The notes beneath the pieces were generated by a model that worked only from the letters and a program-made list of their open reading frames with translations, searched no databases and was not told the origin of the DNA. Of a stretch of 64,000 nt of DNA, positions 5,175 to 63,392 are shown in pieces. Every line of letters starts with the position of its first letter. The stretch's first letter is position 1. The position numbers were made by a program, and so were the translations under genes. The stretch covers positions 372,001 through 436,000 of IMG/VR virus record IMGVR_UViG_3300028920_000022. One strand, given 5' to 3'.

Positions 5175-5182
5175 GGCTCAGA

Positions 5183-6917: not shown

Positions 6918-6931
6918 CCGAGGTAAAAAAA

Positions 6932-7573: not shown

Positions 7574-8598
7574 TGCGAATTCTTTATGCTGCAGGTAATC
7601 GAATTGGCGCCAATAGCCAACTTTGTCGTTTTGTAGACGCCGCAGCTCCTCAACATGAAATTAAAAAAGCTGCCTACCTCCAGGCTAGTGGCTCCATCCC
7701 TCATATCGATTGGACCCTTGACGCGCTGCATCATAATATAATTACGAACAAGTGCAGCAAGGAGTTATTGAATTTATTTGGGCATTCCGGGGTGCCCATG
7801 GTAAACATTTACAGTGTCACTACATTTTTCAAAGAAGTGGAGGAATTCGAGCCAGAGGTAGTGATAAGTGATGGGGAACCGATAGCGGCGCACATAGCCA
7901 AGAGTTTAAATATAAAATTATGGTATTGCAGCCCCATACATTTACTTGACGGGGTCAGGTGGGATAAAGGTCAATTAAGGTACACAACCTTCTTAAATAA
8001 AATGAGACAAAACTTAATAAGGTTTCCTGAGCCTGACCGTGCTTTCGTATATTCCCCCTTCGGAGATATCAAATTCCGTCCGTTCCTAAATTCTGGGTTT
8101 GAATGGATTACCCCATATTATTTAAAATCTGAACTTGGAAATAATAATTGCCTTGCCGTTATCAACGATTATAATAGATTTTCAGAGTTATCGAAAATAT
8201 TAAATGGTGCTGCAAATGATATTACATTATATTCTCCGTATAAGGAAGAGTTTTCGAACATGAAAACTGGGTTAATAGGGGATCTTAAGAAACATTTGGA
8301 AAAAAATAGTTATCAATCTATATTTACTACGGGGGAAACTAGTTATATTGCGGATGCATTTTACTCTGGTTGTAATATATGTGTTAGTCCTACATTGGGG
8401 GATGTGGAGACATTATTAAATGCGATTTTGGTAAAGGAATATAAATTAGGAACTGACATACATCAGGTAGAATTTATGGAAAGTTATGCTTTAGACGAAG
8501 TAGAAAAGGCATTAAACAAGGAACCGGAAACAAATTATTGGAGTTTACAAAATCGTCCATTTTTACACGAAGCATTAGTCGAGCTGAAAAAGCAATGA
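7570..8598 (+). CDS. GT-B glycosyltransferase-like protein (MJ1255-like), possibly divergent
   Basis: MRILYAAG N-terminus; FEPEVVISDGEP. Confidence 0.6.
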   Translation: MMRILYAAGNRIGANSQLCRFVDAAAPQHEIKKAAYLQASGSIPHIDWTLDALHHNIITNKCSKELLNLFGHSGVPMVNIYSVTTFFKEVEEFEPEVVISDGEPIAAHIAKSLNIKLWYCSPIHLLDGVRWDKGQLRYTTFLNKMRQNLIRFPEPDRAFVYSPFGDIKFRPFLNSGFEWITPYYLKSELGNNNCLAVINDYNRFSELSKILNGAANDITLYSPYKEEFSNMKTGLIGDLKKHLEKNSYQSIFTTGETSYIADAFYSGCNICVSPTLGDVETLLNAILVKEYKLGTDIHQVEFMESYALDEVEKALNKEPETNYWSLQNRPFLHEALVELKKQ

Positions 8599-8615
8599 TC
8601 TCAACTAATTGAGTT

Positions 8616-8786
8616 ATGTTACTTATACGTAGATTTAAAAAAGATGAAGTTCTTAAAATTGTAGCGGAATATGCATCTCGGTCATTACCCGAGGAGAAGC
8701 AGGGGGTTATAGAATCTCGGGAAACCAAGGATGGAGGGGTAGAGGTATATTTTATTGAAGAAGACAGAGAAAAATCGATTAATTGA
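8616..8786 (+). CDS. Small hypothetical protein (56 aa, not in the ORF track)
   Basis: MLLIRRFKKDEV...EKSIN* fills the gap and abuts the next ATG at 8788. Confidence 0.45.
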   Translation: MLLIRRFKKDEVLKIVAEYASRSLPEEKQGVIESRETKDGGVEVYFIEEDREKSIN

Positions 8787-8787
8787 T

Positions 8788-8979
8788 ATGAAACCAGAAG
8801 AAGACATTTTAAATGTAGAGCTTGACAAATTGGTAAAGGACGGGTATGTATGGGCTACCTGCCCTCGGTGTGGGCTTTTTTTAGACTCAGCAGAAGCGAA
8901 TCATTGTGATATTTGCAAAACAGATTTTGTCAAAGAAGATATCGTTTTCGTGAAAGTGGATAAAGAAAAGACATGTTAG
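8788..8979 (+). CDS. Small Zn-ribbon protein
   Basis: CPRC...CDIC. Confidence 0.55.
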   Translation: MKPEEDILNVELDKLVKDGYVWATCPRCGLFLDSAEANHCDICKTDFVKEDIVFVKVDKEKTC

Positions 8980-9191
8980 AAACATTAACTGATTCTGAAG
9001 GAACTCTTTGGGAAATTGATCAGAAAGAGTTGACGGATCCTGAAGAAACTTGGTATTATTTGCGCAGGGCGGTAGATCGTCCAGAGTGGGCAGCGAGGAT
9101 TTCTAGCATTACCTTAAAACTTACAACGCGAGAGTCTATACATGTAGCTATAATAGAATGGTTTTTAGAAACTGTATCCAAGAAAATTTAG
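8973..9191 (+). CDS. Hypothetical protein
   Basis: ORF within the operon. Confidence 0.5.
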   Translation: MLETLTDSEGTLWEIDQKELTDPEETWYYLRRAVDRPEWAARISSITLKLTTRESIHVAIIEWFLETVSKKI

Positions 9192-9210
9192 ATCAAAACG
9201 GTGATCGTTC

Positions 9211-9579
9211 ATGGACAAAAGGGCTAAAAAACTAGAAAAAGATATAATTTCGATGATGCAATTTGCTGATATGCAACAGATTAGTACTGGTAGTATTGTG
9301 TGTGACAAAAAATTCAAACCATTCAATTATAATAATATTTATCTCTCATATGTTTTACCCCACAAAAAGATAATTCTTCATGGATATTATGGAAATGATG
9401 TAAAACTTATTATTGTCACTAAAAATAACAAAGTTATTCCTAAGAACTCAAAATATTATTACCAAGCTTTGCAATTTATTCATCAAGTATTGCGTCCAAA
9501 ATATTTAAAAGTTGCCGAACGAAAAATGAAAGAAGAACAAACCTTGGCATTCTTAAAAGAAAAGGGTTTGCCAATATGA
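9211..9579 (+). CDS. Hypothetical protein
   Basis: ORF within the operon. Confidence 0.55.
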   Translation: MDKRAKKLEKDIISMMQFADMQQISTGSIVCDKKFKPFNYNNIYLSYVLPHKKIILHGYYGNDVKLIIVTKNNKVIPKNSKYYYQALQFIHQVLRPKYLKVAERKMKEEQTLAFLKEKGLPI

Positions 9580-10214
9580 ACAAAGTAACTACTAAAAAGA
9601 TTAGCACATATGAGTGTTTTGAAAAAACAATCAAACACCCCAAACATGGTACTATTATTTGTTCTGAAGGGTTTGTAAACGGCATAAAAACAGACCAAAG
9701 TTTTCGTTTAAAAAAGCCAAACCATGAAGGGTACGAGCCTGAAAGGATGACATTTATTTATTATGGTGGACCAATAGATACCCACAAAGTTAGCGAAACA
9801 CATTTTGATGATGATTGTAACTACGGTTTGACACAGGTTTTTGTTGAGGATTTAGAGAAGTTTTCAGATTTCAAAAACCTATATTGTCTCTGGATGAGCA
9901 TGGATAATAACATTTTTCGTTTAACTGATCCACGACCACTTCCTGTTGTAATGCGGTGTGAATTATGGCAAACCAAATATGATCTAGATGCCGCAGCTAA
10001 AAAACTTTCTTCTCGCAAAGACGTGAGGAATATTATACGTACCAACAACTGTGTACAGAATTGGGACATTTGCGGAAAACATAATTTGGTTTTTGATTAT
10101 TATTCTTCACAAAAAACTGTGTGTGATCTTAATGGTGTTATTTGTGAGCGCGACCGTATGATCGCAGACATAGTTGGTGTTGGAAAGTTTCGATATGAAG
10201 AAAAAGAAGACTAA
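9576..10214 (+). CDS. Hypothetical protein
   Basis: ATGA-coupled 212-aa ORF. Confidence 0.6.
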   Translation: MNKVTTKKISTYECFEKTIKHPKHGTIICSEGFVNGIKTDQSFRLKKPNHEGYEPERMTFIYYGGPIDTHKVSETHFDDDCNYGLTQVFVEDLEKFSDFKNLYCLWMSMDNNIFRLTDPRPLPVVMRCELWQTKYDLDAAAKKLSSRKDVRNIIRTNNCVQNWDICGKHNLVFDYYSSQKTVCDLNGVICERDRMIADIVGVGKFRYEEKED

Positions 10215-10628
10215 ACGTAGTAGCTCCTACGAAACACGCTTGTTAATATTCCCCAAACCAAAACGAAAACGCCCCATTAATCCTCCAGGTCCTGCGAGTG
10301 CATACGATTTAGCTACTAGACCAAAGTGGGATAATTGAAAGGGAAAACCCATATGACATTAAGACAATGGTTGGCTGGCAAATGGTTTCTATTATTGGGG
10401 CGTTGTCCTGCTTGCAAATCAAACCCTTTTGTAAAGAGATGTGGAATATGCGAAAAGAGTTTTCCATTATATGGATACCCTGTACAACAATATATATGGA
10501 GACAATATTCATGCTGGTTACAAAGCCATCAATACTATCTACTGTCTGTAAGAAAACAAACTGCGCATAAACGGTTTCAAGCTAAAGAATACGAAGAAAC
10601 ATATTCGTACAATTGAAAGAAAAAAGAT

Positions 10629-12098
10629 ATGCCCGCAAAAGTTCAAAAAACTCCTTTGCTTAAGGAAGGCGAATATACCATAGCCGATGTTTCAGATTGG
10701 AACTTTTTTGATCTTTCAGGCGAAAACGCCCACACTTTTGGCACGTCCAACAAACAATATCACATAGAAATGCACATAGGTAAAAATGGTAAGTGTCAGA
10801 TCTTTACCATGTTTGGTCCAACCGGGGGTACCCAAACTAAAAATTGGCGCTACTTTGACTCTGAAGTTGCCGCCCGTAAAGAATTGGCGTCAATGAAGAA
10901 AAAAAGAGTCAAAAAGAATTATAAAGAAATTAAAGTTGCCATTCGTGCTTACGGTACCGAAGAGGCTAAAAAGATCACTCAAGCTGTTGAGTTCAACAAC
11001 TCAGATATAAAACCCTCCAGCAATCTCCATAAAGAAACCCAACGATTAATGCGGGTTCTCTTTGGTGCAACCGAACACTTCGTTGTTACCACTTTGCGCT
11101 GCCCTCTGGGTCAATTAACCAATGAACAAGTAGATGAGGGTTATAAACGCCTAAATGAAGCAAAAAAATTAATTTCTAATGGTTCACCAAATGCTAAACG
11201 GATTGAAACACTTACCAACGAATTTTATGCTATTATCCCCCACAATTTAGGAGCCGGTGCGAGAGGTAAAATGATGAACCTCTTGCTGGATACTCCACAA
11301 AAGATTGCTCAAAAAGAATATGATTTAGAAACATTATTGGACGCCAAATCGGTTGGAGCTGCCCTGGAAAAGGGCTCAACCGTTGATGATCAATATAATG
11401 AATTGAATACCGATTTTGATTTTATTGATCATAACGATCCTTTATTTCAATGGGTAAATAGGATTGTTTTGGATACTCGGGCACACAACCATAATACTTT
11501 GGGTAAGATTACAGTATTGAATGCTTGGAAATATAATCGTCATGGCGAGAGAAACGTTTTTGAAAAGAGGATGAAAGAGATTGCCAAGGAGTGTAAAAAG
11601 CCGTTTACGCCTAAAGTTTTGAGGAATGCTGTTGAAAATCGGTTAGATATTCCAGATGGACAGGGAGGATTATATAAAAAGGCTAATGTGTTGCCATTAT
11701 TTCATGGAACCCGGACTCAGAACATTGCTGGAATTACGAAGAAGGGATTGTTGATAAGACCTTCGGGTGTGATTTTAGAAGGTTCATGCTACGGTAGTGG
11801 TGTTTATTATGCAAACAACAGTAGCAAAACGATCAACTATAGTAGTGTTCGGGGGGCTTATTATACCCACGGCAAAGACGATCGTGGTTATATATTCATA
11901 GTAGATTGCGTTCTAGGCGACACTTATGTTCCAACTACTGCAGCAAACTACACCAAGGGTAATATTTCCCCCAACCATTCAGTGTGGGCAAAGGGAGGAT
12001 ACTCTGGCGTAATTAATGATGAGTATGTGTTGTTGGACATAAATCAGCATAATATTAGATACTTAGTGGAGTTTACTTGCGGGAAAAATGGAATATAG
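10629..12098 (+). CDS. Poly(ADP-ribose) polymerase-like protein 1 (WGR + regulatory + catalytic domains)
   Basis: WGR-like N-terminus, CPLGQL, FYAIIPH regulatory domain, catalytic FHGT / YGSGVYYA / NDEYV (H-Y-E). Confidence 0.9.
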   Translation: MPAKVQKTPLLKEGEYTIADVSDWNFFDLSGENAHTFGTSNKQYHIEMHIGKNGKCQIFTMFGPTGGTQTKNWRYFDSEVAARKELASMKKKRVKKNYKEIKVAIRAYGTEEAKKITQAVEFNNSDIKPSSNLHKETQRLMRVLFGATEHFVVTTLRCPLGQLTNEQVDEGYKRLNEAKKLISNGSPNAKRIETLTNEFYAIIPHNLGAGARGKMMNLLLDTPQKIAQKEYDLETLLDAKSVGAALEKGSTVDDQYNELNTDFDFIDHNDPLFQWVNRIVLDTRAHNHNTLGKITVLNAWKYNRHGERNVFEKRMKEIAKECKKPFTPKVLRNAVENRLDIPDGQGGLYKKANVLPLFHGTRTQNIAGITKKGLLIRPSGVILEGSCYGSGVYYANNSSKTINYSSVRGAYYTHGKDDRGYIFIVDCVLGDTYVPTTAANYTKGNISPNHSVWAKGGYSGVINDEYVLLDINQHNIRYLVEFTCGKNGI

Positions 12099-48907: not shown

Positions 48908-49588
48908 TCATAATTTTTTTTCGTTTTTTTCGGTAAAGCAACATCTTCCCGATGTGTCATAGTAATGCCAATATGGGGAATGAGAAGTAATCAAAGCAGC
49001 GCAACTTCTCGGTTCAGCCCAAAATCTAGAAGCCAAGCACCAACCTTCTTGCCCCTGGTTACACCGCACCCACTCTTCGGCATTTCCCATCATATCCCAA
49101 GCGCCACTTTGGGAAACGCAGGATTTACGATTACCAGCAGGTTCGCTTTGATCCAGGTATTCCATTTCTTTTTCATCGCGAATAAAGACTTTATATTCAT
49201 CAGCTCCGCGATATCTTTTATCATAATTGCACAAACCGGTATTATCGCCAGGAACGAATTTAGGCAATTCATCGCCGAAGGGATATTTTTTACCTTGAGG
49301 ACCTTCGCAGGCAGCGATCCATTCTTCTGCGGTACAGGGTCTTTTTCCTACGGATTTACAAAGTTCATCAATATTCATTATTTTATCGTCATCGTAAGGT
49401 TCTGGCAGGGCACTCAGACCTAGGAGAGGTTTATGACCTTTAATATTTGGCCATTCGTATTTATCTATACAGGCGGTTGGGGTAGCTGGGACCATACCTT
49501 CTGGGCAAGGATTTTTAGGAGTAAAAGTGCCACCTAAACTACTAAATAGTAAAACGGCGGTCAGAGTTGTGTAAGCAATTCGTTTCAT
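48908..49588 (-). CDS. Formylglycine-generating enzyme (FGE-sulfatase) domain secreted protein
   Basis: CPEGMV, CIDKYEWPN, GKRPCTAEEW, YPFG, DMMGNAEEW, GRCC. Confidence 0.8.
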   Translation of the reverse strand: MKRIAYTTLTAVLLFSSLGGTFTPKNPCPEGMVPATPTACIDKYEWPNIKGHKPLLGLSALPEPYDDDKIMNIDELCKSVGKRPCTAEEWIAACEGPQGKKYPFGDELPKFVPGDNTGLCNYDKRYRGADEYKVFIRDEKEMEYLDQSEPAGNRKSCVSQSGAWDMMGNAEEWVRCNQGQEGWCLASRFWAEPRSCAALITSHSPYWHYYDTSGRCCFTEKNEKKL

Positions 49589-53072: not shown

Positions 53073-53149
53073 GGTCCCCCAGATAGGATTCGAACCTATA
53101 TTATTCACAGATTAGAAATCTGGTGCCATGTCCATTAGGCGACTGGGGG
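53073..53149 (-). tRNA. tRNA-Arg(TCT)
   Basis: On -: CCCCCAG/CTGGGGG-A acceptor, CAGA-TTTCTAA-TCTG, ATAGG-TTCGAAT-CCTAT. Confidence 0.85.
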
Positions 53150-53656
53150 CTACGTTATATACTGTCGGAAACTCTTATAGTCCCCAAACTCTTGCCTAAT
53201 TTCTTTCAAAACTTTTTCTTGGTTGCCGCCAACATATTTCTTTAACAAATAGGCAACCAAATCATCCTGAGCAATTTCTTTTAGTTGACACAGTGGACAC
53301 CGTTCGCTGGGAAGATCATATCCACTACTTTCTGGCTCATACAGATCATTAATAGCATCTTCGTGATCTTTATATAGCTCTTCGATTACATCGTCTCCTG
53401 CTGATTCGAGCATTTTTAATTTGACGTCATCGTGGCGAAATATTTGATTTAGATCTGCACGTTTTCCCTCAAGTGACAGATCTCTTTCTATTTCCTCGCC
53501 GGGGAGCAAATATTCTGCCAAAAACTCATGTCCGCAAACACATTCGGCAGTAGGTTCCTCATATTCTCCATCCCAGCCCGCAAGTGTAATTCCGCTTACT
53601 TGGCATGTGAAGCTGCTAGAACTGCTGTTAGAAACGAATCCTGTTCTTATTTTCAC
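53150..53656 (-). CDS. MKIRxxFVSNSSSSS-family protein 4 (Cys-containing)
   Basis: MKIRTGFVSNSSSSSFTC..SG, CVCGH, CPLC. Confidence 0.75.
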   Translation of the reverse strand: MKIRTGFVSNSSSSSFTCQVSGITLAGWDGEYEEPTAECVCGHEFLAEYLLPGEEIERDLSLEGKRADLNQIFRHDDVKLKMLESAGDDVIEELYKDHEDAINDLYEPESSGYDLPSERCPLCQLKEIAQDDLVAYLLKKYVGGNQEKVLKEIRQEFGDYKSFRQYIT

Positions 53657-53657
53657 G

Positions 53658-54026
53658 CTAATATCCTCCTTCGTGTTCCATTATGAAATCTTCGGTACGT
53701 ATGTTCAAATCGGTATTACACAGTAACGATTCTACTTCTTCTCCACCATTACCACAATCATCAAAACTTCCGATATAAACGAATTTGCCCTTTTTCTTTA
53801 ATTCTTCTTGGTATTCTGGCTCGTAATAATTCCAGTCTTCAGAATCTTGACACAATTTTGCTTTAGTAAAAATGGTATCAATTATTTCTGAAATCACCTC
53901 ACGTAGTGGGTGTCGTTTAGTGACACCGAAAGATTTGATTAGCATCTGTTTTGTAAGTTTTCGTTTTGTAACAATAACGAAAGATGAGGAAGATGAATTA
54001 GAAACGAATCCTGTACGTATTTTCAC
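53658..54026 (-). CDS. MKIRxxFVSNSSSSS-family protein 3
   Basis: MKIRTGFVSNSSSSSFVIV; body unrelated to the other three. Confidence 0.75.
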   Translation of the reverse strand: MKIRTGFVSNSSSSSFVIVTKRKLTKQMLIKSFGVTKRHPLREVISEIIDTIFTKAKLCQDSEDWNYYEPEYQEELKKKGKFVYIGSFDDCGNGGEEVESLLCNTDLNIRTEDFIMEHEGGY

Positions 54027-54547
54027 AGCTCTACCTTTTCCACATATTTTGCAAACTCTTTATACGAAGAAAAACGGGAGAATATTTCCTTATCAACAGC
54101 TTCTAAAGTGCCCTTGTCTCCCAGTAATTCTTTTACTAGAAAGCGTATTCTGTCATTTATAGCGATTTTTTCAAAATGACAAATGGGACAACAAGTAGAC
54201 GGCAGCTCATAAAATCTATATTCTCCCCAGGAATCACTTAATGCGTCGTTTAGCGAACCGATAGAATTATCGAAAATTCTATTTATAGCAGCATCATCAA
54301 GTTCGTCGCCATAATCGCAAAAATACCGACTCAACTCTTCAGAGGTTAGAAATTCTTTCTTTTCATCGGTGGTTAGATTTTTATCCAGCTTTCTCACAAA
54401 GTTGGGAGCAAAGGCGTGACCACAAAGACATTCCATTGGATAAAAGTCTTCATATTCGCCGTCACGTCCGGAAGTAACATCCCCACTTATCTGACATACG
54501 AAACTACTGGAACTACTATTTGAAACAAAACTGGTACGTATTTTCAT
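54023..54547 (-). CDS. MKIRxxFVSNSSSSS-family protein 2 (Cys-containing)
   Basis: MKIRTSFVSNSSSSSFVC..SG, CLCGH, CPIC. Confidence 0.75.
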   Translation of the reverse strand: MKIRTSFVSNSSSSSFVCQISGDVTSGRDGEYEDFYPMECLCGHAFAPNFVRKLDKNLTTDEKKEFLTSEELSRYFCDYGDELDDAAINRIFDNSIGSLNDALSDSWGEYRFYELPSTCCPICHFEKIAINDRIRFLVKELLGDKGTLEAVDKEIFSRFSSYKEFAKYVEKVEL

Positions 54548-55113
54548 TTTTTATTGTCCATTGCTTTTTTGAAGGCACTATACGTGCCGAATTTATTTCG
54601 TAGTTCTTTTATGACAGTTTTTCTGGCACGTCTTCCCAACAGGTATTTCAGCAACTCATCATCTGGCACATCATCAAAAGCACAAACTGGGCACATGAAC
54701 CCAGGAAGTTCGCCAATGTATGAATCGTACTTATCTTTTTGAGCATTTATGTGGCTCAAGAAAGATTTTGTATTTAGGTGCGTAAATGCCTCATCTATTT
54801 TAGCATCGGCTCGTTTTTTGTTATATCCCCACATTTTGTTTACGAGGTTATGTCCGTCTTCTGACAGTATTTCGGTATCGAAATCGCCGTCAACTTCAAA
54901 AGCCAAGGAAATCATCTGCCACTTATCTTCCGAGGACATATTACGTGGTATTTCACACTTAATATATTCGTAAAGAAAGTTGTGTCCATTACAGCAACTT
55001 GCCATCGGTGGACCATCCCAACATCCATGGGAATTCACGCTAGTGGTACCGCTAATATCGCAAGTGTAACTTGAGGAGCTAGAATTTGAAACAAAACCCA
55101 ATCTAATCTTCAT
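54544..55113 (-). CDS. MKIRxxFVSNSSSSS-family protein 1 (Cys-containing)
   Basis: MKIRLGFVSNSSSSSYTC..SG, CCNGH, CPVC. Confidence 0.75.
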   Translation of the reverse strand: MKIRLGFVSNSSSSSYTCDISGTTSVNSHGCWDGPPMASCCNGHNFLYEYIKCEIPRNMSSEDKWQMISLAFEVDGDFDTEILSEDGHNLVNKMWGYNKKRADAKIDEAFTHLNTKSFLSHINAQKDKYDSYIGELPGFMCPVCAFDDVPDDELLKYLLGRRARKTVIKELRNKFGTYSAFKKAMDNKK

Positions 55114-55303
55114 TCTTTTGATCTCCGCACTTTTTGATCATTTTCCAAAACGATTTTTTGCTGAGAATTAAAACAGCATCGGCAAGATAGGGAGCTTCTA
55201 GATCCTCAATGTGAACTGAGTCAGAATATTGAGTAATTTTAATGTGTTTGTCTTCAAATAGTGTTTTAAATTTTGGCATACTTATTGCCCTTCAAAAGAT
55301 TTT

Positions 55304-55576
55304 CTACCGTTTCACGTCAATTACATGAAAGGCGTATGCATTATTTAATACAAGTTCAGCTACGCTTTCAATTTTACGACATTTGGCAATATCGTCCCAA
55401 ACTCCATTTTCAGACATGTTGCGGCAGCATGCGTATACACCATCAGGCAACTTTGGAACGGCAACTTCCGCAATTGACTCATATCCGCCAGAAGCATCCA
55501 TTTCCACAAGACGTTTTCTGTTTTTAAACAACCATTTGGTTATTTGCTTTACCCAAGGCTGTACCACAAATCTCAT
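55304..55576 (-). CDS. Hypothetical protein
   Basis: ATG abuts the left end of the TnpB element. Confidence 0.5.
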   Translation of the reverse strand: MRFVVQPWVKQITKWLFKNRKRLVEMDASGGYESIAEVAVPKLPDGVYACCRNMSENGVWDDIAKCRKIESVAELVLNNAYAFHVIDVKR

Positions 55577-55580
55577 TTAA

Positions 55581-56810
55581 CCTAATCAAAAAAGAAGTCC
55601 TCTACTTTTAAGTGGAGGATGAATTTTTTCTTCCGTATCTACGCATAATTATTCATATTTTTGAAGATATGTTGGTTTACAAATACAGACTCTATCCCAG
55701 TAAAAAGCAGCAAGAAAAACTGTGGATACATGCGAATAAATTGAATTGGATCTATAACCAGTTTCTAGATCAGAAAATTAACACATATAAGAATACAAAA
55801 AAGAATCTCTCCAGATACGATCTACAAGCGCAATTACCGAAACTTAAACAACGAGATCCAGTAATTAAAGAAATACATTCGCAAGTTTTGCAACAGGTGC
55901 CCAAGCGTTTAAACCAAGCATTTAAAGATTTTTACAAAAGAGGAAACAAAGGATTTCCAAACTTCAGATCTAGTTTGAACTTCTTCGGTATTTGTTATCC
56001 TCAGAGCGGATACTCTATATCAGGAAATGTCTTTAGAACGAAAATATACGGTAAAATGTCGTTTCTCAAATATCGCCCTATTCGTGGGAATATTCGACAA
56101 GTGTATATTACTAGTGAGAAAAATGGCTGGTTCATTTGTATAACAACTGACTATGAAAAAGATATTCCGAAAGCAACGGATAAGATCGGTATTGATGTAG
56201 GATTAAAGGATTTGGTTGTAACATCCGAAGGAAAACATATTAAAAACTGTAGTCATGCGAAATATTTTGACAAACAGATAGCGAAGATATCGTCAAGAAT
56301 AGATAAGAAAAAGAATAAGAAATCCAGATCTCGAAAGTTTCTGTGTAAAGTTCGGCGCAGATTGTATGATGTGAAAAAACGTAAGATTAACGATTTTCAA
56401 CATAAAGTCTCGAAGAGACTTAGTTCCGAATGCGATACAATATTTGCTGAGAATTTGAGTGTAAAGAAGATGAGTGAAGGAGAATTGCGGAACTTAAACA
56501 AGAGCATTCGAAATGCCAAATTAGCTAATTTCATTTCGTATCTATCATACAAGACCAACACATTGGTGTTGGTCAATCCGAAGAACACAAGCAAGACATG
56601 TAATCATTGTGGGAATATTCGAGAGAATTTGAAGTTATCCGAGAGGACGATTACATGTGACAAATGTGGTGAAGTATATGATAGGGACGAAAATGCCGCT
56701 AAGAACGTTTATTGCCTGGGACAGGCTATTCAGGATCTACAGTTAGAACCTGAGTATGCTGAATTATTTACGATTCAGGAAGCTCTTGCCTTAAGGCAAG
56801 AGTAGTTCAC
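55581..56810 (+). mobile_element. Non-autonomous IS200/IS605-family element (tnpB only)
   Basis: Left hairpin GTCCTCTACTT/AAGTGGAGGAT; right hairpin GCTCTTGCC/GGCAAGAGT followed by AGTTCAC; no tnpA. Left boundary is 55581 or 55587. Confidence 0.8.
55669..56805 (+). CDS. tnpB: RNA-guided endonuclease TnpB
   Basis: YKYRLYP HTH, IGIDVG (RuvC-I), FAENL (II), CNHC/CDKC Zn finger, DRDENAAKN (III). Confidence 0.92.
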   Translation: MLVYKYRLYPSKKQQEKLWIHANKLNWIYNQFLDQKINTYKNTKKNLSRYDLQAQLPKLKQRDPVIKEIHSQVLQQVPKRLNQAFKDFYKRGNKGFPNFRSSLNFFGICYPQSGYSISGNVFRTKIYGKMSFLKYRPIRGNIRQVYITSEKNGWFICITTDYEKDIPKATDKIGIDVGLKDLVVTSEGKHIKNCSHAKYFDKQIAKISSRIDKKKNKKSRSRKFLCKVRRRLYDVKKRKINDFQHKVSKRLSSECDTIFAENLSVKKMSEGELRNLNKSIRNAKLANFISYLSYKTNTLVLVNPKNTSKTCNHCGNIRENLKLSERTITCDKCGEVYDRDENAAKNVYCLGQAIQDLQLEPEYAELFTIQEALALRQE

Positions 56811-57160
56811 TCCTCCGCCAGGGTTTGGATTACTTTAGGTTCAGTTACTACGCCATTTTTTATGCGTAAACCGCTAGCAGATCCGTCTTCCCAGGTTAAG
56901 ATTACTTCTAAATGCCCCTGAATTTTTGGCGCAATGTTCTTAACAAAATTATCCCAAAAGTGTCCAGAACATGTACCACCCCACATAAAGTCTTTTAGAA
57001 CAAACTTGCCTTCTTGTGCTATTTTGAACGGCTTTGCTTCGTACAAGAAGTGTGTTTCTGGCAAAAGGTCTTCTTCGTTATCTAAAATCCACTCCACGTC
57101 CGTGGCTGAAATCCAGGCATCACACTTTAGTGTGTGGCAATGATTTATGTTACAACTCAT
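56807..57160 (-). CDS. Hypothetical protein
   Basis: W.G..SG...WEDG pattern; its stop codon is supplied by the IS right end. Confidence 0.6.
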   Translation of the reverse strand: MSCNINHCHTLKCDAWISATDVEWILDNEEDLLPETHFLYEAKPFKIAQEGKFVLKDFMWGGTCSGHFWDNFVKNIAPKIQGHLEVILTWEDGSASGLRIKNGVVTEPKVIQTLAEE

Positions 57161-57162
57161 TT

Positions 57163-58212
57163 TTATACCTCAAACAACGGACATGTTCTACAAGAAAACG
57201 AATTGCTTTCCCTGGTTTTTAATAAACTATTACGGAATGCAACCATTCTTTCGTGGTTCCACACATCTTCAATAAATGAATTGCAGGAGACTACGTCCAT
57301 TCCCCGCGCCCACTCTACACAACCCTCGGCAAAAGAGCAAGGAAAAGCTTCACCCTTCCAGTTGATAAATATGGAAAACAATGAACTCTCGCAAGGCTCC
57401 ACATACTCAGCTATCTTGTCAAAATCTTTATGGTTTTTAATTGTGTTCAAGAATTTGAAAGCGGAACAACTATCGAAACCAAGCCCAACATTATTTGAAG
57501 TAGCTTGGTAAACCAAGTAAGCAAACTTGTTTTGTGACAGTTTGTGATAATGTTTCCCTCGCCCCTTTTGCTTTAAAGATAGCATAACAATAGCTTTTAC
57601 AGGATCCAAACGAGAATCTTTTACCTTGTCTCTAATGGTTTCCCGAGTAAGATTAAATGTTTCCTCACTGATCATACAATGAATGTTAATTTGTTGCAAC
57701 CCATGTTTGTGCAATTTTTGAATAGAATCGTAGCAAATATTTTTATTTTCGTAACGGCTGACAGCAACAGCCCCACAAACTTCTGCTAGTTTTGCTGCAG
57801 TTTCGTCTGAAATATCGGCAACGGTGATGTTTGGTATAACCCCATTGTTTCGACAATACCACATCATATCGAAAAGTTCGGGGTTTGATGTGGCATTACT
57901 ATCCGCACCAAAAGCAATTTGCGTTAGTATTCGGTTTTCTGTAATTTTGTCGAAAACTTTTTTAAAGGTATCCAGGGACATGTTGTTGCCAACCGGAGTA
58001 TTAGATTTGTAGCAATGTTTACAAACCTTTCCACCTACACCTTTACATATGGTGGTTACTTCGATGTCAGCAATCTCGGGAGACGGCGACATCTCCGGGT
58101 CTTCTTTTTTAGAGCTGCCCCAACGAATAAAATATCCAGAACCTTTATGGAACCGGTAATTATAATTAGGAGAGCGAACTGTTTTATGGTGTTTGCTTTC
58201 AGTAATTTTCAT
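57163..58212 (-). CDS. Radical SAM protein with SPASM/Twitch domain
   Basis: CKGVGGKVCKHC (CX7CX2C), PNIT, C-terminal PCES...PCSF...CRTCP. Confidence 0.85.
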   Translation of the reverse strand: MKITESKHHKTVRSPNYNYRFHKGSGYFIRWGSSKKEDPEMSPSPEIADIEVTTICKGVGGKVCKHCYKSNTPVGNNMSLDTFKKVFDKITENRILTQIAFGADSNATSNPELFDMMWYCRNNGVIPNITVADISDETAAKLAEVCGAVAVSRYENKNICYDSIQKLHKHGLQQINIHCMISEETFNLTRETIRDKVKDSRLDPVKAIVMLSLKQKGRGKHYHKLSQNKFAYLVYQATSNNVGLGFDSCSAFKFLNTIKNHKDFDKIAEYVEPCESSLFSIFINWKGEAFPCSFAEGCVEWARGMDVVSCNSFIEDVWNHERMVAFRNSLLKTRESNSFSCRTCPLFEV

Positions 58213-61200
58213 CCATTGCGTACCCTTCGGAGATATTGCGCCAAGTTTTCATTAGGTTTCGGCGCGTAATCTCCAAGGTACTCTAGCTTTTCTTCCATGT
58301 CAACACCAATAATTTTTCCAAAATTTTCCAGCTCTTTCTTTGCGTTTCCCCACAAAGCATTCTTATTTTTGAGGAACCAAACCAGCGCTATTTCTTCAAT
58401 ATTTTTACCATTAAATCTGGCATCCGGATTCAGAATATAGGTAGAAAAGAATATTTCCATAGCCTCAGCAAATTCGTTTTCTCGTTCTTGGTAAGCTATA
58501 TTGCGTGCCATTCCTTTTGGAATATTGGCAACCATTTCTTTATATTCTTCTGGCAATTGGTATACATTTTTTGCAATCAGTCGTAAAGCGGTTCCTATAG
58601 GCATCCATTTTGTTTTATCTTGTTCGAAAAGTCCGCTCATTTCTGCTGGGTTAATTTGTCCTATTTCTTTTCCTTGCAGCTGAATTCCCTTAATATTTTT
58701 GATATTAATTGGTCTGTGAACAACGCCCTGATTTTCTCCCAAATCGTTCATTTCGCCTTTTTCGTTATGTCTGGTGTCGTCTGGGTCAATCTCTATCCAA
58801 TTGAGCGGAATTGCCATTTCCAGTACCACTGGATCTCCGCCATCTTCTTTCGCGGTGTGATTAGCATAGAGCCAGGCGCCTGTAAAGCCTTCCAGCTGAC
58901 GGGTGACGTAGATACCTGGGCTTACTGATTCCCAATTAACGTAATTTTCGGCAATAGAGGGGTCCAGGGAGCCATGTTGAACAATAAGTGCCAATTTCTT
59001 AGACGAGGTACCGTGGTAAACAATTACCTTGTGTTTTCCAGCAGCCTCTCTAAATTCGGGATCGTGTAAACTTCGGACTCTACCCAGCTCTAGTGGCAAA
59101 GCCCTCTTAGAAAAAGCCAGGGACTGTTTCAATAAATTATGTCGTATAAATGCCTTTATTGTTGTATCAGTTTCTTTTTTCAACATTTCTTTAAGGTTAT
59201 TATTATCAAGCTTTGTGGCAATTTTAATTCTTTCTTTTTTGTCTTTTTTAGATATTAATTTAACCAAAGGGTCTTTGGTGTCATTGGTATCTTCCTCGTC
59301 TTCATCTTCTCCGCAGCCACATTCTTCACAATGTTCAGTTTCGCATGGGCAATCTTCACAATGACATCCACAGTTTAGACAATCATCGAAGCCACATCCA
59401 CAATTTGGACATTCTTCAGTTTCGCAAGTGCAGTCTTCACAATGGCAGCCACAATTTTCACAGTTATCATAGCCACATCCACAATCTGGACACTGTTCTG
59501 TTTCGCAAGTACAATCTGGACAATGACATCCACAGTTAGGACATGGGTCTAATCCACAACCACACTCTTCACATTGCTCTTCATCGCAATTACAATCCTC
59601 ACAATGACATCCACAATTTTCACAGTTATCAAACCCACATCCACAATTTGGACATTCTTCAGTCTCGCAAGTGCAGTCTTCACAGTCACACTCGCAATGT
59701 GGACAAATGGCTTCAGGTTTTATTCTCATACGAACGGCTCTAAACTTAGCATAAAGCTTGGCATATTCATTGCCTACCATCTTGTCTTTTATGATATTTA
59801 ATACTGAATATTGAGCTTTATGGTTTAGAATTTCATTACCCAGCATTTTACGTAGATATTGGTAATCAATTCTTTTTGCAACAGCTCCGCGAACATCTAC
59901 TGAAGGATCATCCATGAGTAATGTTAAATATTTTTTATCTACTCTTTGGGCCACAGCATAACGCACCAGTTGGGTATCCCATATGGGGCTATCAATGAGA
60001 AGGTGTAAACTTTTCTCTGGCAAGCGTTGAGCCAGCTTTCCTAAAGCATCCAAGTTTTTAATATTTTTTGTCAAGATTTGTGGGAGATATTTTTCCAGCA
60101 GCTCGGGTTTTGTTTTCATAAACAACTGCCCCATTGCCATATATTCAATTGGTCCCAAGTCTTGCCTATTCAATAATTCTTCAAATACATTAGAAGTATC
60201 TTTCATTTTATGTAATGCAGCAGACACTGTGTCTAAATTATCACTTTTGACCATTGCTTCCAAATCTGATTCGTCAGCAACCTGTTGAACAAAAAGCTGT
60301 TGCACTCTAAAATTATTGTCATGCATCATAAAAGACTTAAGTACTTTATGATATTTTTTAGCTATATTTTTGTCGTAAACCAGTTTACTATATGCTGATA
60401 AACGTACATTTTCATCTTCCGATCTCACAAAATGGAAAGCTTCAAGTATTGGTAGGCGATTAATGGCTGCTTGTTGTGCGTTTGGTGTTGTGTTTTTTAA
60501 TAAATCTATATGATCTTGCAGATCCTGGTAGTTCATTGACGTAGCTGCATAATATTGATTTGACGGATCGTCAGAAGACAGATGTTCAACTCGCCTCATA
60601 CGCTCTCGTAACACCTCTAATACTCGTGGGTTTTTTTCCGTCTTCATCATTAAAGATATTTGGTTGTAAGGTATTCGTTGTGCTACGGAATCTCGTACAG
60701 TTTCGGACTGGTCTTTCACCATTAATATCAAACGATCTCTGGGTATTTTTTGTGCTACTATGTTGCGAACACCAACGCTGGGATCTTTCATCATTTCAGG
60801 TAGATATTTTTCATCTATAGTGTTAGCTATTTGAACTCGTATAGGCTCAAATTCATCATGAATAAATTTAGGCAAATATTTTTTATCCACTTGTTTGATG
60901 GCAGCGTATCTTGCGTTATCATTAGTGCTTTCAAGTAGTCTTACCCAAGGAATTTTACTATATATAACCTGTGTTACAGCAAGATCTATATCTCCATTTT
61001 TGCGATCAAGAATTTTGTTTAAATACTCTTCAGAATATTCCTCATAACGATGGTTATCTATATAAGCAACAACCACATCATCATCCGGGTCGTTTTTTAA
61101 TGTTGTTAGTTTTTCTTTCAACTCTTGTGTTTGAGCAGGAACGTTTTGTGCTATCCACATGCGGATTTTAGTGATTGGACTTGTGGATAGCTTTACTAAT

Positions 61201-63392
61201 ATATCTACGGTTTCTTCATTGTATCCATATACATTCGTAAGAGTTTTTAGGGCGTATATCCTGGTATCAACATTCATGTTTTCATCAGTGGATATTTGGT
61301 GTAGCTCTTCTTCTGAAGCATGAGAGAGAGCCTCTCCTTTAATATACAGATAACCTTCTGACAAACTATCATCGTGTAGTATTAATTTTAGAATTTCTGA
61401 ATCTATATCGCTACGCAACGCAATTGCTGCTTTTATTTTATCGGTACCATTTAGATACATTTCTTTAAGGTACTTTGCGTCTATTCTTTTTGCTACAATT
61501 CTTCGAACATCTTCATCTGGATGATCTTTGAAAGGAACCACCTTATCTTCTGGAACATATACCAAAGCCGTTAAAACCACAGAAACGCTTGGGTCATTAA
61601 GCAGTTTTACACATATTTCTGGAGGAGCCACACTTGCCAACTCTGCCCTTACACTTGGGTTTGGATCATTCAACATTCCTGCTAGAACTGCCACATCCCC
61701 GTTAGCAGCCAAAACTTTTACAGCTTCCTTGCGCACACGAGTGCTTTTCATAAATTTAGCTAATTGGTGAGGATATTTTCTTACAACATCACTTAAAAAC
61801 ACTTCAGATGAATAATTTTCTTCGTTAATATTTGTTTTATTATAAAGAGCCTCCATGTACGCTAGTATAGTGTTTTCATTGGCGTTTGCGTTCAAAAACT
61901 CTCTGAAGGGTATCAGGTTATAGGTGCGTGCAGCCGTCCACACTTCTTCCGGTACTGATTGTGATATTATTTTTTTACTTTGTTCTAATAGCGTATTTCT
62001 ATATGATTCATTTATATGTGGATTTTGGGCGGCAGCGATAACTACTGGATAATCTCTAATGTGTCGTTTTAAAACCCTATAAAACAAATCCCCATCATAT
62101 CGCTTGATAAGTTCGGCAAGAACAGATATACTGGAATCATTATACATGGTTTCGATAATGTCCATATCAGCTCGCTGTGCCACCTCTAGGCGTACTTTTT
62201 CCGATGGATCATCTACCAACAACCCCAGATCTCTGGATAAAAGACGTTTTGCTATAAATAACCGTTCAGCTGGAGTGGCTTCTTCTGTAATTAAATGAAT
62301 TAAATGTTCTTTTTTAGTTTTTTTATATTTACCTAAGTCTATAGGTCCAGTGGATTCTGTTAATAATTCTTTTAATTCATTTTCAACTTTATATACGGGT
62401 TTTTTTGTTTTAGGATTAATTCCTTCCCATTTTGGTTTTTCTCTATAAGGGTTTTTGATAATATCGATCACATCTATGGCATTTGTTCCAAAGTAGGCGC
62501 CCTGATAAGGTTCGTTGGTATGTATTGTTCCGGTTCCTGGATCATGTACCCCAGAATAGCCCAAACTGGTAAGAATACGTCTAAACAAAAACTTATTCTC
62601 AATATTCAATCCCAGCTTTCCAACCGAATTATGAACAAACCTTACAATATAAAATAATTGTGACGCAACCGTGGCTACATTTCTAGAACCTTCGCTTTTA
62701 TTATACAACTTGTCAACAATTTTATTTATTTGGTTGGGGACCTTAGAGGTATCATCTCCCAGATATTTTTGTTTTAATTGATGTAATTCGTTTTGAAGTT
62801 TGTATTCTGATTGATTAGCTTTTACTAACTCCAAAGACGCTTGGGACATACCTTCTTTATCGTCTTTTTCTTCAAAACTTCTGTAACGTTCAGCAAAACC
62901 AGCCTTCTCTTCTTGTATTTTTTGTAATCTAATTTCTGCTTCTTCTATTTCTTTCTTTCGTTTTTGTTGAGTGCCTAAAACATAAGGCACAAGTATGTTT
63001 TTTATTTTTTCTACATCTCTTTCTAGATCGCCCTCGTTATACTTGCCAACGTCTAAAACAGTTTCGGGATTTCTGGCTTTAAATATAATAACACCAGGGC
63101 TATCAGCTTTAAAACGAATAATTTTTCTAGTACCATTAATAAAGTCTTCAACGGTTTTTTCTATAATAGGAAAACCATAAATTCCTACAGGAGTATCATA
63201 ATGAGATTGTAGATATAATCCCCAAATGAGTTTTTTATCTTGATTTCGGTTTGCCCAAGGATTTACGGTTTCAGAAAAATGCAAATAATGATAGGGTTTA
63301 ACATAATTCTTGATAATTCCCACCGCAGGAGGAATGTGGATATCCTCTTTTATATGCCTACGTTTCGCTTGTTTATAACTCATTTGTCCCAT
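58209..63392 (-). CDS. 1727-aa polyvalent protein: ART-like N-domain, HEAT/LRV repeats, Cys-rich repeats, C-terminal ART-like domain
   Basis: Repeated DPSxxVRxxVA; five 27-aa Cys repeats; VYHGTS...PGIYVT...YA..VVLE; N-terminal TPVGIY...LGYSGVHD.G.GTIH.NEP.Q. Confidence 0.7.
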   Translation of the reverse strand: MGQMSYKQAKRRHIKEDIHIPPAVGIIKNYVKPYHYLHFSETVNPWANRNQDKKLIWGLYLQSHYDTPVGIYGFPIIEKTVEDFINGTRKIIRFKADSPGVIIFKARNPETVLDVGKYNEGDLERDVEKIKNILVPYVLGTQQKRKKEIEEAEIRLQKIQEEKAGFAERYRSFEEKDDKEGMSQASLELVKANQSEYKLQNELHQLKQKYLGDDTSKVPNQINKIVDKLYNKSEGSRNVATVASQLFYIVRFVHNSVGKLGLNIENKFLFRRILTSLGYSGVHDPGTGTIHTNEPYQGAYFGTNAIDVIDIIKNPYREKPKWEGINPKTKKPVYKVENELKELLTESTGPIDLGKYKKTKKEHLIHLITEEATPAERLFIAKRLLSRDLGLLVDDPSEKVRLEVAQRADMDIIETMYNDSSISVLAELIKRYDGDLFYRVLKRHIRDYPVVIAAAQNPHINESYRNTLLEQSKKIISQSVPEEVWTAARTYNLIPFREFLNANANENTILAYMEALYNKTNINEENYSSEVFLSDVVRKYPHQLAKFMKSTRVRKEAVKVLAANGDVAVLAGMLNDPNPSVRAELASVAPPEICVKLLNDPSVSVVLTALVYVPEDKVVPFKDHPDEDVRRIVAKRIDAKYLKEMYLNGTDKIKAAIALRSDIDSEILKLILHDDSLSEGYLYIKGEALSHASEEELHQISTDENMNVDTRIYALKTLTNVYGYNEETVDILVKLSTSPITKIRMWIAQNVPAQTQELKEKLTTLKNDPDDDVVVAYIDNHRYEEYSEEYLNKILDRKNGDIDLAVTQVIYSKIPWVRLLESTNDNARYAAIKQVDKKYLPKFIHDEFEPIRVQIANTIDEKYLPEMMKDPSVGVRNIVAQKIPRDRLILMVKDQSETVRDSVAQRIPYNQISLMMKTEKNPRVLEVLRERMRRVEHLSSDDPSNQYYAATSMNYQDLQDHIDLLKNTTPNAQQAAINRLPILEAFHFVRSEDENVRLSAYSKLVYDKNIAKKYHKVLKSFMMHDNNFRVQQLFVQQVADESDLEAMVKSDNLDTVSAALHKMKDTSNVFEELLNRQDLGPIEYMAMGQLFMKTKPELLEKYLPQILTKNIKNLDALGKLAQRLPEKSLHLLIDSPIWDTQLVRYAVAQRVDKKYLTLLMDDPSVDVRGAVAKRIDYQYLRKMLGNEILNHKAQYSVLNIIKDKMVGNEYAKLYAKFRAVRMRIKPEAICPHCECDCEDCTCETEECPNCGCGFDNCENCGCHCEDCNCDEEQCEECGCGLDPCPNCGCHCPDCTCETEQCPDCGCGYDNCENCGCHCEDCTCETEECPNCGCGFDDCLNCGCHCEDCPCETEHCEECGCGEDEDEEDTNDTKDPLVKLISKKDKKERIKIATKLDNNNLKEMLKKETDTTIKAFIRHNLLKQSLAFSKRALPLELGRVRSLHDPEFREAAGKHKVIVYHGTSSKKLALIVQHGSLDPSIAENYVNWESVSPGIYVTRQLEGFTGAWLYANHTAKEDGGDPVVLEMAIPLNWIEIDPDDTRHNEKGEMNDLGENQGVVHRPINIKNIKGIQLQGKEIGQINPAEMSGLFEQDKTKWMPIGTALRLIAKNVYQLPEEYKEMVANIPKGMARNIAYQERENEFAEAMEIFFSTYILNPDARFNGKNIEEIALVWFLKNKNALWGNAKKELENFGKIIGVDMEEKLEYLGDYAPKPNENLAQYLRRVRNG
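59310..59705 (-). repeat. Five tandem ~81-bp repeats encoding CxxCxCxCxxCxC....CxxCGCG
   Basis: Seen in both DNA and protein; nine Cys per unit. Confidence 0.9.

What the first reader, a model, noticed from the sequence alone, without database searches (positions are those of the whole stretch)
53150..58212. Four tandem MKIRxxFVSNSSSSS proteins downstream of an atypical radical SAM/SPASM enzyme
Seen: four adjacent genes share a near-invariant 16-aa N-terminus with mixed Ser codons (TCN and AGY), which indicates protein-level selection. Three continue into a C..SG / CxxGH / CPxC metal-binding body; one has an unrelated body. A radical SAM gene with CX7CX2C instead of CX3CX2C lies upstream on the same strand, separated only by small ORFs and the IS. 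Established: SPASM enzymes typically modify peptides or proteins, including Ser/Cys to formylglycine. Inference: a phage post-translational modification system in which the SNSSSSS motif is the substrate or recognition tag. I know of no assigned function for this motif.
Basis: partly seen in the sequence, partly recalled or inferred. Interest (0 to 1): 0.75.

Follow-up and report, generated by a model that had tools for sequence, protein, structure and literature searches.

The report
Phage radical-SAM enzyme with tagged client proteins
A giant phage from marine sediment carries a radical SAM enzyme next to four small proteins that all begin with the same 16 amino acids; the same enzyme-plus-tag pairing recurs in hundreds of phages, including cultured T4-like Klebsiella and E. 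coli phages, and most likely marks an undescribed protein-modification system.

Summary
Four tandem minus-strand genes (53150-55113) start M-K-I-R-x-G-F-V-S-N-S-S-S-S-S-F/Y, with 6-11 of 16 codons differing synonymously between copies. A radical SAM gene (57163-58212) lies upstream on the same strand.

- Of 66 non-redundant viral loci chosen only for the enzyme, 60 carry tagged ORFs within 10 kb. All are on the enzyme's strand, and the nearest tagged ORF typically starts about 200 bp from the enzyme gene.
- T4-like isolates such as KP15 and RB43 have the enzyme plus two tagged genes about 20 kb away.
- A 489-aa protein elsewhere in this genome fuses a tagged domain to a related radical SAM domain.
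- A complex model puts tag residues 1-10 into the enzyme barrel (ipSAE 0.67, best control 0.02).

The proteins behind the tag are unrelated: 118 clusters, with no profile homology between the large ones. So the tag is portable. The tag family has about 25,500 50%-identity clusters, the enzyme family at least 4,484 clusters at 90% identity, and neither has a Pfam, NCBIfam or literature assignment.

Two corrections. CX7CX2C is a lineage-specific loop insertion. The C-terminal domain conserves cysteines for one auxiliary cluster, so it is Twitch-like rather than full SPASM.

The chemistry is unknown, and formylglycine formation is only one candidate.

The parts
57163..58212 (-). Radical SAM maturase, 349 aa, phrog_7293 family. 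It has a 45-aa N-terminal beta-sheet extension, a C-x7-C-x2-C cluster loop, and a C-terminal Twitch/SPASM-like domain with four family-invariant Cys.
56807..57160 (-). orf117, an untagged small ORF directly downstream of the enzyme gene. Function unknown.
   Evidence: No Pfam, PHROG, NCBIfam or PADLOC hit. No homolog in the related loci L011-L044.
55612..56805 (+). TnpB / IS605-OrfB transposase-like gene on the opposite strand. It is probably an insertion that separates the enzyme gene from its client array. Single copy in the genome.
   Evidence: PF01385, PF07282 and PF12323 hits, phrog_506. Single copy. In relatives the tag genes start a median of about 215 bp from the enzyme gene.
55103..55576 (-). 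orf90 (55304-55576) and orf58 (55103-55279): small untagged ORFs between the IS and the array.
   Evidence: No family hits.
54544..55113 (-). Tagged client protein 1, 189 aa, zinc-ribbon body (cluster 0).
54023..54547 (-). Tagged client protein 2, 174 aa, zinc-ribbon body (cluster 0). This copy was used in the complex model.
   Evidence: Complex ipSAE 0.67 against a best control of 0.02, with partner residues 1-10 at the interface.
53658..54026 (-). Tagged client protein 3, 122 aa, unrelated body (cluster 4, ends in EHEGGY). Its paralog lies at genome position 102425-102796.
53150..53656 (-). Tagged client protein 4, 168 aa, zinc-ribbon body (cluster 0), GTG start.
53073..53149 (-). tRNA-Arg (anticodon TCT), abutting the stop codon of the last tagged gene. 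Whether it belongs to the module is uncertain.
   Evidence: ARAGORN and Rfam RF00005 at 56.3 bits.

Best explanation
This is a two-component phage protein-maturation module.

- The enzyme is a Twitch/SPASM-class radical SAM protein of the phrog_7293 family.
- Its clients are many otherwise unrelated small proteins. Each starts, exactly at residue 1, with the near-invariant tag M-K-I-R-x-G-F-V-S-N-S-S-S-S-S-F.
- Inferred mechanism: the freshly made client offers its N-terminal strand to the enzyme. The strand pairs with the enzyme's small N-terminal beta-sheet, much as a RiPP leader pairs with its maturase, and threads across the top of the SAM-binding barrel.
- A 5'-deoxyadenosyl radical would then abstract a hydrogen from a residue in or right next to the tag. 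The core R-x-G-F-[VA]-[ST]-N-S-S-S, shared with the fused family, is the most likely site. The result would be a covalent modification that all clients need.
- The variable bodies (zinc ribbons and over 100 other clusters) would supply the different downstream activities.

Shown: the tag, its protein-level conservation, the gene linkage, the fusion, and the unrelated bodies.
Model-level: tag residues 1-10 lie in the barrel.
Inferred: that a modification occurs, and where.

The chemistry is open. Candidates are Ser C-beta oxidation (formylglycine-type), a Phe7-x-Ser9 cyclophane or other cross-link, and epimerisation.
For: 1. Forward linkage. Of 34 viral loci found through the tag alone, 20 have an ortholog of the window enzyme (35-53% identity) within 10 kb. 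Three more have it elsewhere in the record, and one complete genome has only a remnant.
2. Reverse linkage. Of 80 loci found through the enzyme alone, 67 have tag ORFs, plus 2 with variant tags. After de-replication that is 60 of 66 enzyme clusters. All 267 tag ORFs are on the enzyme's strand and none on the other. Downstream copies number 190 and upstream 32. The nearest tag ORF starts a median of 215 bp from the enzyme gene.
3. Isolates. The enzyme is in 172 INPHARED records, and the two tagged genes (KP15_97 and KP15_102 homologs) are in 174-175 records with nearly the same genus distribution.
4. No third partner. Tagged families are the only gene families that recur beside the enzyme across 100 loci.
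5. Fusion. Genome position 166922 encodes a 489-aa protein with a tag-bearing N-domain plus a radical SAM domain (PF04055, 2.6e-17). This architecture gave 1,931 hits at E <= 0.001 among 8,000 scored candidates. Its N-domain body is homologous to free client cluster 8 (hhalign 96.8%, E 2.5e-10).
6. Portable tag. The other large body clusters show no profile homology to one another (all below 35% probability).
7. Complex model. ipSAE is 0.67 (runs 0.61-0.68) against a best control of 0.02. Only partner residues 1-10 make confident contacts. They touch enzyme residues 24-37 and barrel positions, many of which are invariant columns of A2: G25, G31, D48, Q97, A99, N127, T129, G146, N175, H177, L210, D246, E271.
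Against: - No modified protein has been observed; everything here is genomic or modelled.
- The complex model gives no atom-level geometry, so the target residue is unknown. The Ser run itself (residues 11-15) is not among the confident contacts.
- In the AF2 model of the fused protein, the N-terminal strand is confident (pLDDT 84), so it may be a packed structural strand rather than a free substrate.
- One complete genome keeps a tagged gene but only a remnant of the enzyme (G018). One 88%-complete record has a tag gene and no enzyme of this family (G017).
- The fused relative lacks auxiliary-cluster cysteines. This argues against a single oxidative chemistry that needs that cluster.
- The isolate co-distribution reflects a single clade, so it counts as one evolutionary event.
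Confidence: 0.65

Rival explanations
1. Leader-only (RiPP-like) reading. The tag is purely a recognition leader for the enzyme, and the modification is installed in the variable body, for example on the Cys-rich segment of the zinc-ribbon clients. The tag itself is not modified.
For: A conserved N-terminus with variable downstream sequence is the RiPP precursor pattern. The closest folds are leader-binding maturases such as SuiB, SkfB, CteB and ChlB. Confident contacts include the enzyme's N-terminal sheet, residues 24-37.
Against: The bodies are 66-390 aa and fall into 118 clusters with no common motif that one active site could target. Tag residues 1-10 are modelled in the barrel itself, touching invariant residues, not only on a peripheral domain. 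No RRE/PqqD domain is detected. Invariance extends through S15-F16, further than docking alone would seem to need.
Confidence: 0.15
2. Structural or catalytic-strand reading. The tag is the first beta-strand plus a Ser-rich, phosphate-loop-like turn of the clients' own active or binding site. The radical SAM protein is a functional partner or complex subunit, not a modifier of the tag.
For: The fused family has further invariant polar motifs in its N-domain (D92-H93-Q-S95 and G136-G137-N-D139-N) that look like an active site. Several free clusters carry an acidic 'G-D-E-x-G'-type strand and an 'E-H' motif by eye. AF2 models residues 2-7 of the fused protein as a confident strand.
Against: Bodies of different clusters share no profile homology, and some are too short for a common fold. 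The tag always starts exactly at residue 1 in free clients (146 of 150). The complex model buries residues 1-10 in the enzyme's barrel, while controls score 0.00-0.02.
Confidence: 0.12
3. Sorting-signal reading. The tag is a targeting or turnover signal, such as a capsid-targeting propeptide like those of T4 internal proteins, a secretion signal or a degron. Its linkage to the radical SAM gene is incidental.
For: A shared short N-terminus on unrelated proteins is what T4 capsid-targeting sequences look like (my own knowledge, not tested here). The clients are small, numerous phage proteins.
Against: Linkage to the enzyme is tight and directional: 60 of 66 clusters, the same strand in all 267 cases. 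The fusion exists. No head, protease or secretion gene recurs beside the module. By inspection the tag has no hydrophobic core, lipobox or twin-arginine.
Confidence: 0.05

Closest known systems
RiPP radical SAM/SPASM maturases that bind a precursor leader (SuiB-SuiA, SkfB, CteB, ChlB-ChlA, PqqE)
   Different: The clients are folded proteins of 66-390 aa in over 100 unrelated families, not short peptides. The 'leader' is only 16 residues and starts at Met1. No RRE/PqqD domain, protease or exporter accompanies the module. Only one auxiliary cluster's worth of Cys is conserved. The module is essentially phage-borne: only 12 zinc-ribbon-type tag loci, all in MAG contigs, were found among 185,579 species genomes.
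Anaerobic sulfatase-maturating enzyme (anSME/AtsB), which converts Ser or Cys to formylglycine
   Different: The tag has no (C/S)-x-(P/A)-x-R motif. anSME has two auxiliary clusters, whereas here four invariant Cys suggest one. No anSME NCBIfam model is hit. The clients are not sulfatases. The fused relative has no auxiliary Cys at all.
Twitch-domain radical SAM dehydrogenases (BtrN, SpeY)
   Same: BtrN is the nearest true sequence match among solved structures, through the C-terminal W..FR...C..C segment. Both have a single auxiliary cluster with the C-x12-G-x4-C hairpin.
Glycyl-radical enzyme activases and their R-V-x-G-[FYW] substrates
   Same: A radical SAM enzyme acts on a short conserved protein motif that contains an invariant Arg, Gly and aromatic residue. 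The tag has R4-x-G6-F7.

Membership tests
Radical SAM superfamily | Three-Cys motif (canonically CX3CX2C) that binds the SAM-cleaving [4Fe-4S] cluster, on a partial TIM barrel | tested here: met
SPASM subfamily (two auxiliary clusters) | Seven-Cys motif CX9-15GX4C ... CX2CX5CX3C ... C | tested here: not met
   The Pfam SPASM domain is hit above its cutoff (26.5 bits against 21.5). However, only C248, C273, C291 and C343 are invariant. The C-x12-G-x4-C hairpin is present, but the CX2CX5CX3C block is absent.
Twitch-type radical SAM (one auxiliary cluster) | Truncated SPASM with a CX9-15GX4C hairpin and about four Cys for a single auxiliary cluster | tested here: met
   There are four invariant C-terminal Cys, including the C273-x12-G286-x4-C291 hairpin. 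BtrN is the best true sequence match among solved structures. Cluster content itself cannot be tested with these tools.
anSME / formylglycine system | Substrate motif (C/S)-x-(P/A)-x-R on a sulfatase, and enzyme membership in the anSME models | tested here: not met
   The tag consensus lacks the motif. The only NCBIfam hit for the enzyme is a weak one to a tungsten-cofactor maturase model (26 bits against a cutoff of 380). The clients have no sulfatase domain.
RiPP maturase with RRE | PqqD-like RiPP recognition element that binds the leader | tested here: inconclusive
   No PqqD/RRE Pfam hit. However, the 45-aa N-terminal four-strand sheet aligns with the N-terminal region of SuiB and SkfB (model range starts at residue 3 or 7), and it contacts the tag in the complex model.
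Glycyl radical enzyme / activase pair | R-V-x-G-[FYW] fingerprint in a C-terminal glycyl-radical domain | tested here: not met
   The tag reads R-x-G-F at residues 4-7, at the N-terminus. No Gly_radical domain was found in the clients.
Three-residue cyclophane (triceptide) maturases | Aromatic-x-x motif cross-linked by a radical SAM/SPASM enzyme | not testable with these tools
   F7-V8-S9 (F-A-T in the fused family) fits an aromatic-x-x pattern. FxsB, XyeB and WgkB are cited as cyclophane formers in PMC10114670. Only mass spectrometry or NMR can test for the cross-link.
IS200/IS605 TnpB (the intervening element) | OrfB_IS605 core, zinc-ribbon TNB domain and N-terminal HTH | tested here: met
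   PF01385 at 3.7e-15, PF07282 at 4.5e-15, PF12323 at 5.6e-10.

The most novel reading that the evidence does not exclude
Large phages share a general 'N-terminal tag plus dedicated radical SAM enzyme' pathway. It would install a not-yet-described covalent modification, such as a Ser-derived aldehyde, a Phe-Ser cyclophane cap or a similar cross-link, on the first ~16 residues of many unrelated proteins per genome (up to 13 in one viral locus, 14 in one MAG contig). That would amount to a phage-wide protein activation or protection system, comparable in scope to leader-guided RiPP maturation but acting on whole proteins.
Probability: 0.45. Interest if true: 0.88.

Novelty: new variant of a known kind. 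Interest (0 to 1): 0.78.

Why it matters
- **Scale.** The tag family is very large and unannotated: 25,521 50%-identity clusters in a 1.84-billion-protein library. Its partner enzyme family has at least 4,484 clusters at 90% identity.
- **New function for many proteins.** If the tag is a radical SAM substrate, thousands of 'hypothetical' phage proteins gain a shared maturation step. Radical SAM protein chemistry would also gain a substrate class of whole proteins addressed by a 16-residue N-terminal tag.
- **Testable now.** Cultured T4-like phages carry one enzyme and two clients. These include RB43, Lw1 on E. coli BL21(DE3), phT4A and KP15/KP27.
- **Possible tool.** A short portable tag recognised by one enzyme could also be useful for protein engineering.

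Tried and rejected
- Pfam, NCBIfam, PHROGs and PADLOC on the four clients gave nothing except phrog_7397 positions 1-21, which is the tag itself. Pfam on 40 client representatives gave nothing consistent.
- Megablast and tblastn of the window's region and of a zinc-ribbon client against cultured phages found no match.
- PDB profile searches with the client alignment and with the fused family found no solved relative of the tag domains.
- The ESM Atlas returned only unnamed viral clusters.
- Literature searches for the motif strings and for phage radical SAM modification systems found nothing relevant. [quoted passage not shown]
- I tested whether all client bodies are one divergent fold. hhalign rejected this, except for cluster 8 against the fused N-domain.
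- I tested for a third conserved partner such as a protease, exporter or RRE protein. None was found.
- The FGE-sulfatase gene 3.5 kb downstream looked like a lead for formylglycine chemistry, but it is absent from all related loci.
- The promoter and terminator scan was no better than shuffled sequence.
- The search for related loci on genome contigs with the enzyme alignment failed for lack of a conserved stretch, so I used the client alignment instead.
- No RNA-seq run holds the region, so expression was not examined and read laying was not used.
I removed it and did not resend it elsewhere.


Full report
**Setting**

The window is positions 372001-436000 of a 458,729-bp virus record that CheckV rates as complete. 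The only sequencing runs that hold it are marine-sediment metagenomes. It is a very large phage with about 38% GC.

**The observation**

Four back-to-back minus-strand ORFs all begin M/V-K-I-R-[TL]-[GS]-F-V-S-N-S-S-S-S-S-[FY]:
- 53150-53656 (168 aa)
- 53658-54026 (122 aa)
- 54023-54547 (174 aa)
- 54544-55113 (189 aa)

TCN and AGY serine codons are mixed. Between any two copies, 6-11 of the 16 codons differ synonymously, and only 28-35 of 48 nt are identical. Selection therefore acts on the peptide, not on a DNA or RNA element.

Three copies share a body with C18, CxxGH and CPxC. In relatives this body reads FICxxCG ... CxxGH ... CPxC, which looks like a zinc ribbon. The 122-aa copy has a different body.

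The upstream gene at 57163-58212 is a radical SAM protein with C-x7-C-x2-C. It has a Pfam SPASM hit above threshold and matches phrog_7293 at 2e-104. Between it and the array lie one small ORF, a TnpB/IS605-OrfB gene on the other strand, and two more small ORFs.

**The tag elsewhere in this genome**

A six-frame scan of the whole genome finds the tag seven times, always at a real ORF start:
- the four tandem genes;
- a 124-aa paralog of the 122-aa copy at position 102425;
- a 90-aa protein at 442376;
- a 489-aa protein at 166922. Its N-terminus carries a close variant of the tag (R-L-G-F-A-T-N-S-S-S-S-H-S), and its C-terminal half is a canonical CX3CX2C radical SAM domain (PF04055, 2.6e-17).

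**Linkage in other phages**

I searched IMG/VR with the tag alone and recovered 34 loci. They hold arrays of up to nine tagged genes. Twenty of these loci have an ortholog of the window enzyme (35-53% identity) within the 10-kb flank.

I checked the records without a full-length ortholog in the flank:
- three have the enzyme elsewhere in the record;
- one complete genome has only a C-terminal remnant;
- one 88%-complete record has none;
- the remainder are fragments no more than 49% complete.

The reverse search used an alignment of the enzyme only. It found 202 viral relatives, of which the best 80 were kept.
- 67 have tagged ORFs in the flank, plus 2 with slightly variant tags.
- After collapsing to 66 enzyme clusters at 80% identity, 60 have tags.
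- All 267 tag ORFs are on the enzyme's strand and none on the opposite strand.
- 190 lie downstream and 32 upstream.
- The nearest tag ORF starts a median of 215 bp from the enzyme gene.

The only gene families that recur beside the enzyme across 100 loci are tagged families. There is no protease, exporter or other partner.

**Cultured phages**

The enzyme occurs in 172 INPHARED records of T4-like enterobacterial phages, including KP15, KP27, RB43, Miller, CfP1, GAP161 and Lw1. There it has no tagged neighbour within 10 kb. However, each genome tested carries exactly two tagged genes about 20 kb away on the same strand. In KP15 these are KP15_97 and KP15_102, both annotated as hypothetical.

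Their homologs occur in 174 and 175 records, with nearly the same genus distribution as the enzyme. This is one clade, so it counts as one evolutionary event. Its value is that it provides tractable material.

Among 185,579 species genomes, only 12 loci encode zinc-ribbon-type (A6) tag relatives, and all are MAG contigs.

**Size and annotation status**

- A profile of 39 diverse clients finds 25,521 50%-identity clusters at E <= 0.001 in 1.84 billion representatives. The listed best matches nearly all begin at residue 1.
- The enzyme family has 4,484 clusters at E <= 1e-10.
- The fused architecture gave 1,931 hits at E <= 0.001 among 8,000 scored candidates.
- None of the three has a Pfam, NCBIfam or PADLOC family or a named Atlas cluster.
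- The open literature I could search contains neither the motif nor a functional study.

**Is the tag a portable module or part of one fold?**

The 329 distinct clients in my loci fall into 118 body clusters. I compared profiles of the 12 largest clusters with the first 18 residues removed. No homology appeared (all below 35% probability), with one exception: cluster 8 matches the N-domain of the fused protein at 96.8% (E 2.5e-10).

So the tag is attached to unrelated bodies. The fused protein is a normal client joined to a radical SAM domain, which is a Rosetta-stone argument that the two work together.

In unbiased positions the tag is close to invariant: G6, F7, V8, S9, N10, S11, S12, S15 and F16. 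Positions 5, 13 and 14 tolerate change. The core shared with the fused family is R-x-G-F-[VA]-[ST]-N-S-S-S.

**The enzyme**

Alignment A2 shows invariant C55, C63 and C66, and a first loop of variable length. About half of the orthologs have CX3CX2C, and others have CX7 or longer. The window's CX7CX2C is therefore a lineage-specific insertion, not a family trait.

Downstream only C248, C273, C291 and C343 are invariant. C273-x12-G-x4-C291 forms the SPASM/Twitch hairpin, and the CX2CX5CX3C block is missing. That points to one auxiliary cluster. The fused family conserves no cysteine beyond the SAM cluster.

|---|---|
| SuiB | 23.8 (310 residues aligned, starting at model residue 3) |
| SkfB | 22.1 |
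| anSME | 19.2 |
| CteB | 19.0 |
| TigE | 18.4 |
| ChlB | 18.2 |

Viperins and PqqE follow. The enzyme is therefore built like peptide- and protein-modifying maturases.

**Does the tag dock?**

I modelled a complex of the enzyme, two [4Fe-4S] clusters, SAM and the 174-aa client. It scored ipSAE 0.67 (three runs: 0.61-0.68). Two unrelated partners scored 0.00 and 0.02, and an unrelated enzyme scored 0.00.

The only client residues with confident contacts are 1-10. On the enzyme they touch residues 24-31 and 34-37, which form the last strand of the N-terminal sheet and the conserved RWG segment. They also touch barrel-lining positions 46, 48, 97, 99, 125-129, 145-149, 173-177, 205-210, 246 and 268-271. 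Many of these are invariant columns of A2.

This is model-level support only. The tool's own calibration (58 of 80 true complexes and 2 of 110 mismatched pairs reach the mark) holds only roughly here, because I supplied my own alignments and ligands.

**Interpretation**

Four independent lines point the same way: two-way linkage, the fusion, the portable tag, and docking of the tag in the active-site barrel.

What the enzyme does to the tag cannot be decided with these tools.
- Formylglycine-type Ser oxidation is chemically reasonable for a Twitch-like enzyme. Against it, the canonical motif is absent and the fused relatives have no auxiliary cluster.
- A Phe7-x-Ser9 cyclophane, another cross-link, or epimerisation are equally open.
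- A glycyl-radical reading (R-x-G-F) fails the fingerprint spacing and the domain test.

The main rivals are listed with their tests in the Rival explanations section: tag as leader only, tag as a structural or catalytic strand with the enzyme as partner, and tag as a sorting signal.

**Verdict**

The system is an undescribed variant of radical SAM protein and peptide maturation, with an unusually large and uniform client tag. It can be tested directly in cultured T4-like phages.

Noticed in passing
G000:C1:166922-168391 (L008:6922-8391, + strand), outside the window: A 489-aa protein fuses a tag-bearing N-domain (invariant N-S-S-S, H, S, D-H-Q-S and G-G-N-D-N motifs) to a CX3CX2C radical SAM domain with no auxiliary-cluster Cys. 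This architecture gave 1,931 hits at E <= 0.001 among 8,000 scored candidates, and a few members carry a LAGLIDADG/intein domain.
   Followed up: yes
G000:C1:102425-102796 (+) and G000:C1:442107-442376 (-), outside the window: Two further tagged genes lie away from the array. One is a 124-aa paralog of the window's 122-aa copy. The other is a 90-aa client of a third body type.
   Followed up: partly
window 48908-49588 (-): A 226-aa protein with an N-terminal hydrophobic signal-like segment and an FGE-sulfatase (SUMF1-like) domain (PF03781, 4.7e-7) lies 3.5 kb downstream of the tag array. It is a tempting link to formylglycine chemistry, but it has no homolog in any of the related loci.
   Followed up: yes
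window 53073-53149 (-): A tRNA-Arg (anticodon TCT, which reads AGA) starts one base after the stop codon of the last tagged gene. Two of the four tags use AGA for the invariant Arg4.
   Followed up: no
window 58209-63392 (-): A 1727-aa protein lies directly upstream of the radical SAM gene and overlaps its start codon. It has HEAT/LRV-type repeats and a block of about six C-P-x-C-G-C-G ... C-x-C-E-T-E Cys-rich repeats near residue 1300.
   Followed up: no
L016:7188-8246 (547,943-bp IMG/VR contig): This enzyme ortholog has an in-frame TGA exactly at the family-conserved Trp of the R-W-G motif. That hints that this very large phage reads TGA as Trp.
   Followed up: no
G018 (144,173-bp complete IMG/VR genome, L025), positions 113097-113336: Only an 82-aa C-terminal remnant of the enzyme gene remains, with an internal TAA, yet a zinc-ribbon tagged gene is kept. 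This may be a decaying module.
   Followed up: partly
Cultured relatives: Cronobacter phage leB (H20) and Klebsiella phage Kpn35c1 (PMC9960720): The enzyme gene is split into two pieces in some isolates. In Kpn35c1 a GIY-YIG homing endonuclease is reported at that site.
   Followed up: no
window 1-2000: GC content is 54.7%, against about 38% for the rest of the window.
   Followed up: no
L141 (MAG contig CAZLSE010000020.1), positions 3084-10885: Fourteen tagged genes lie on one strand within about 8 kb. This is the largest array seen.
   Followed up: no
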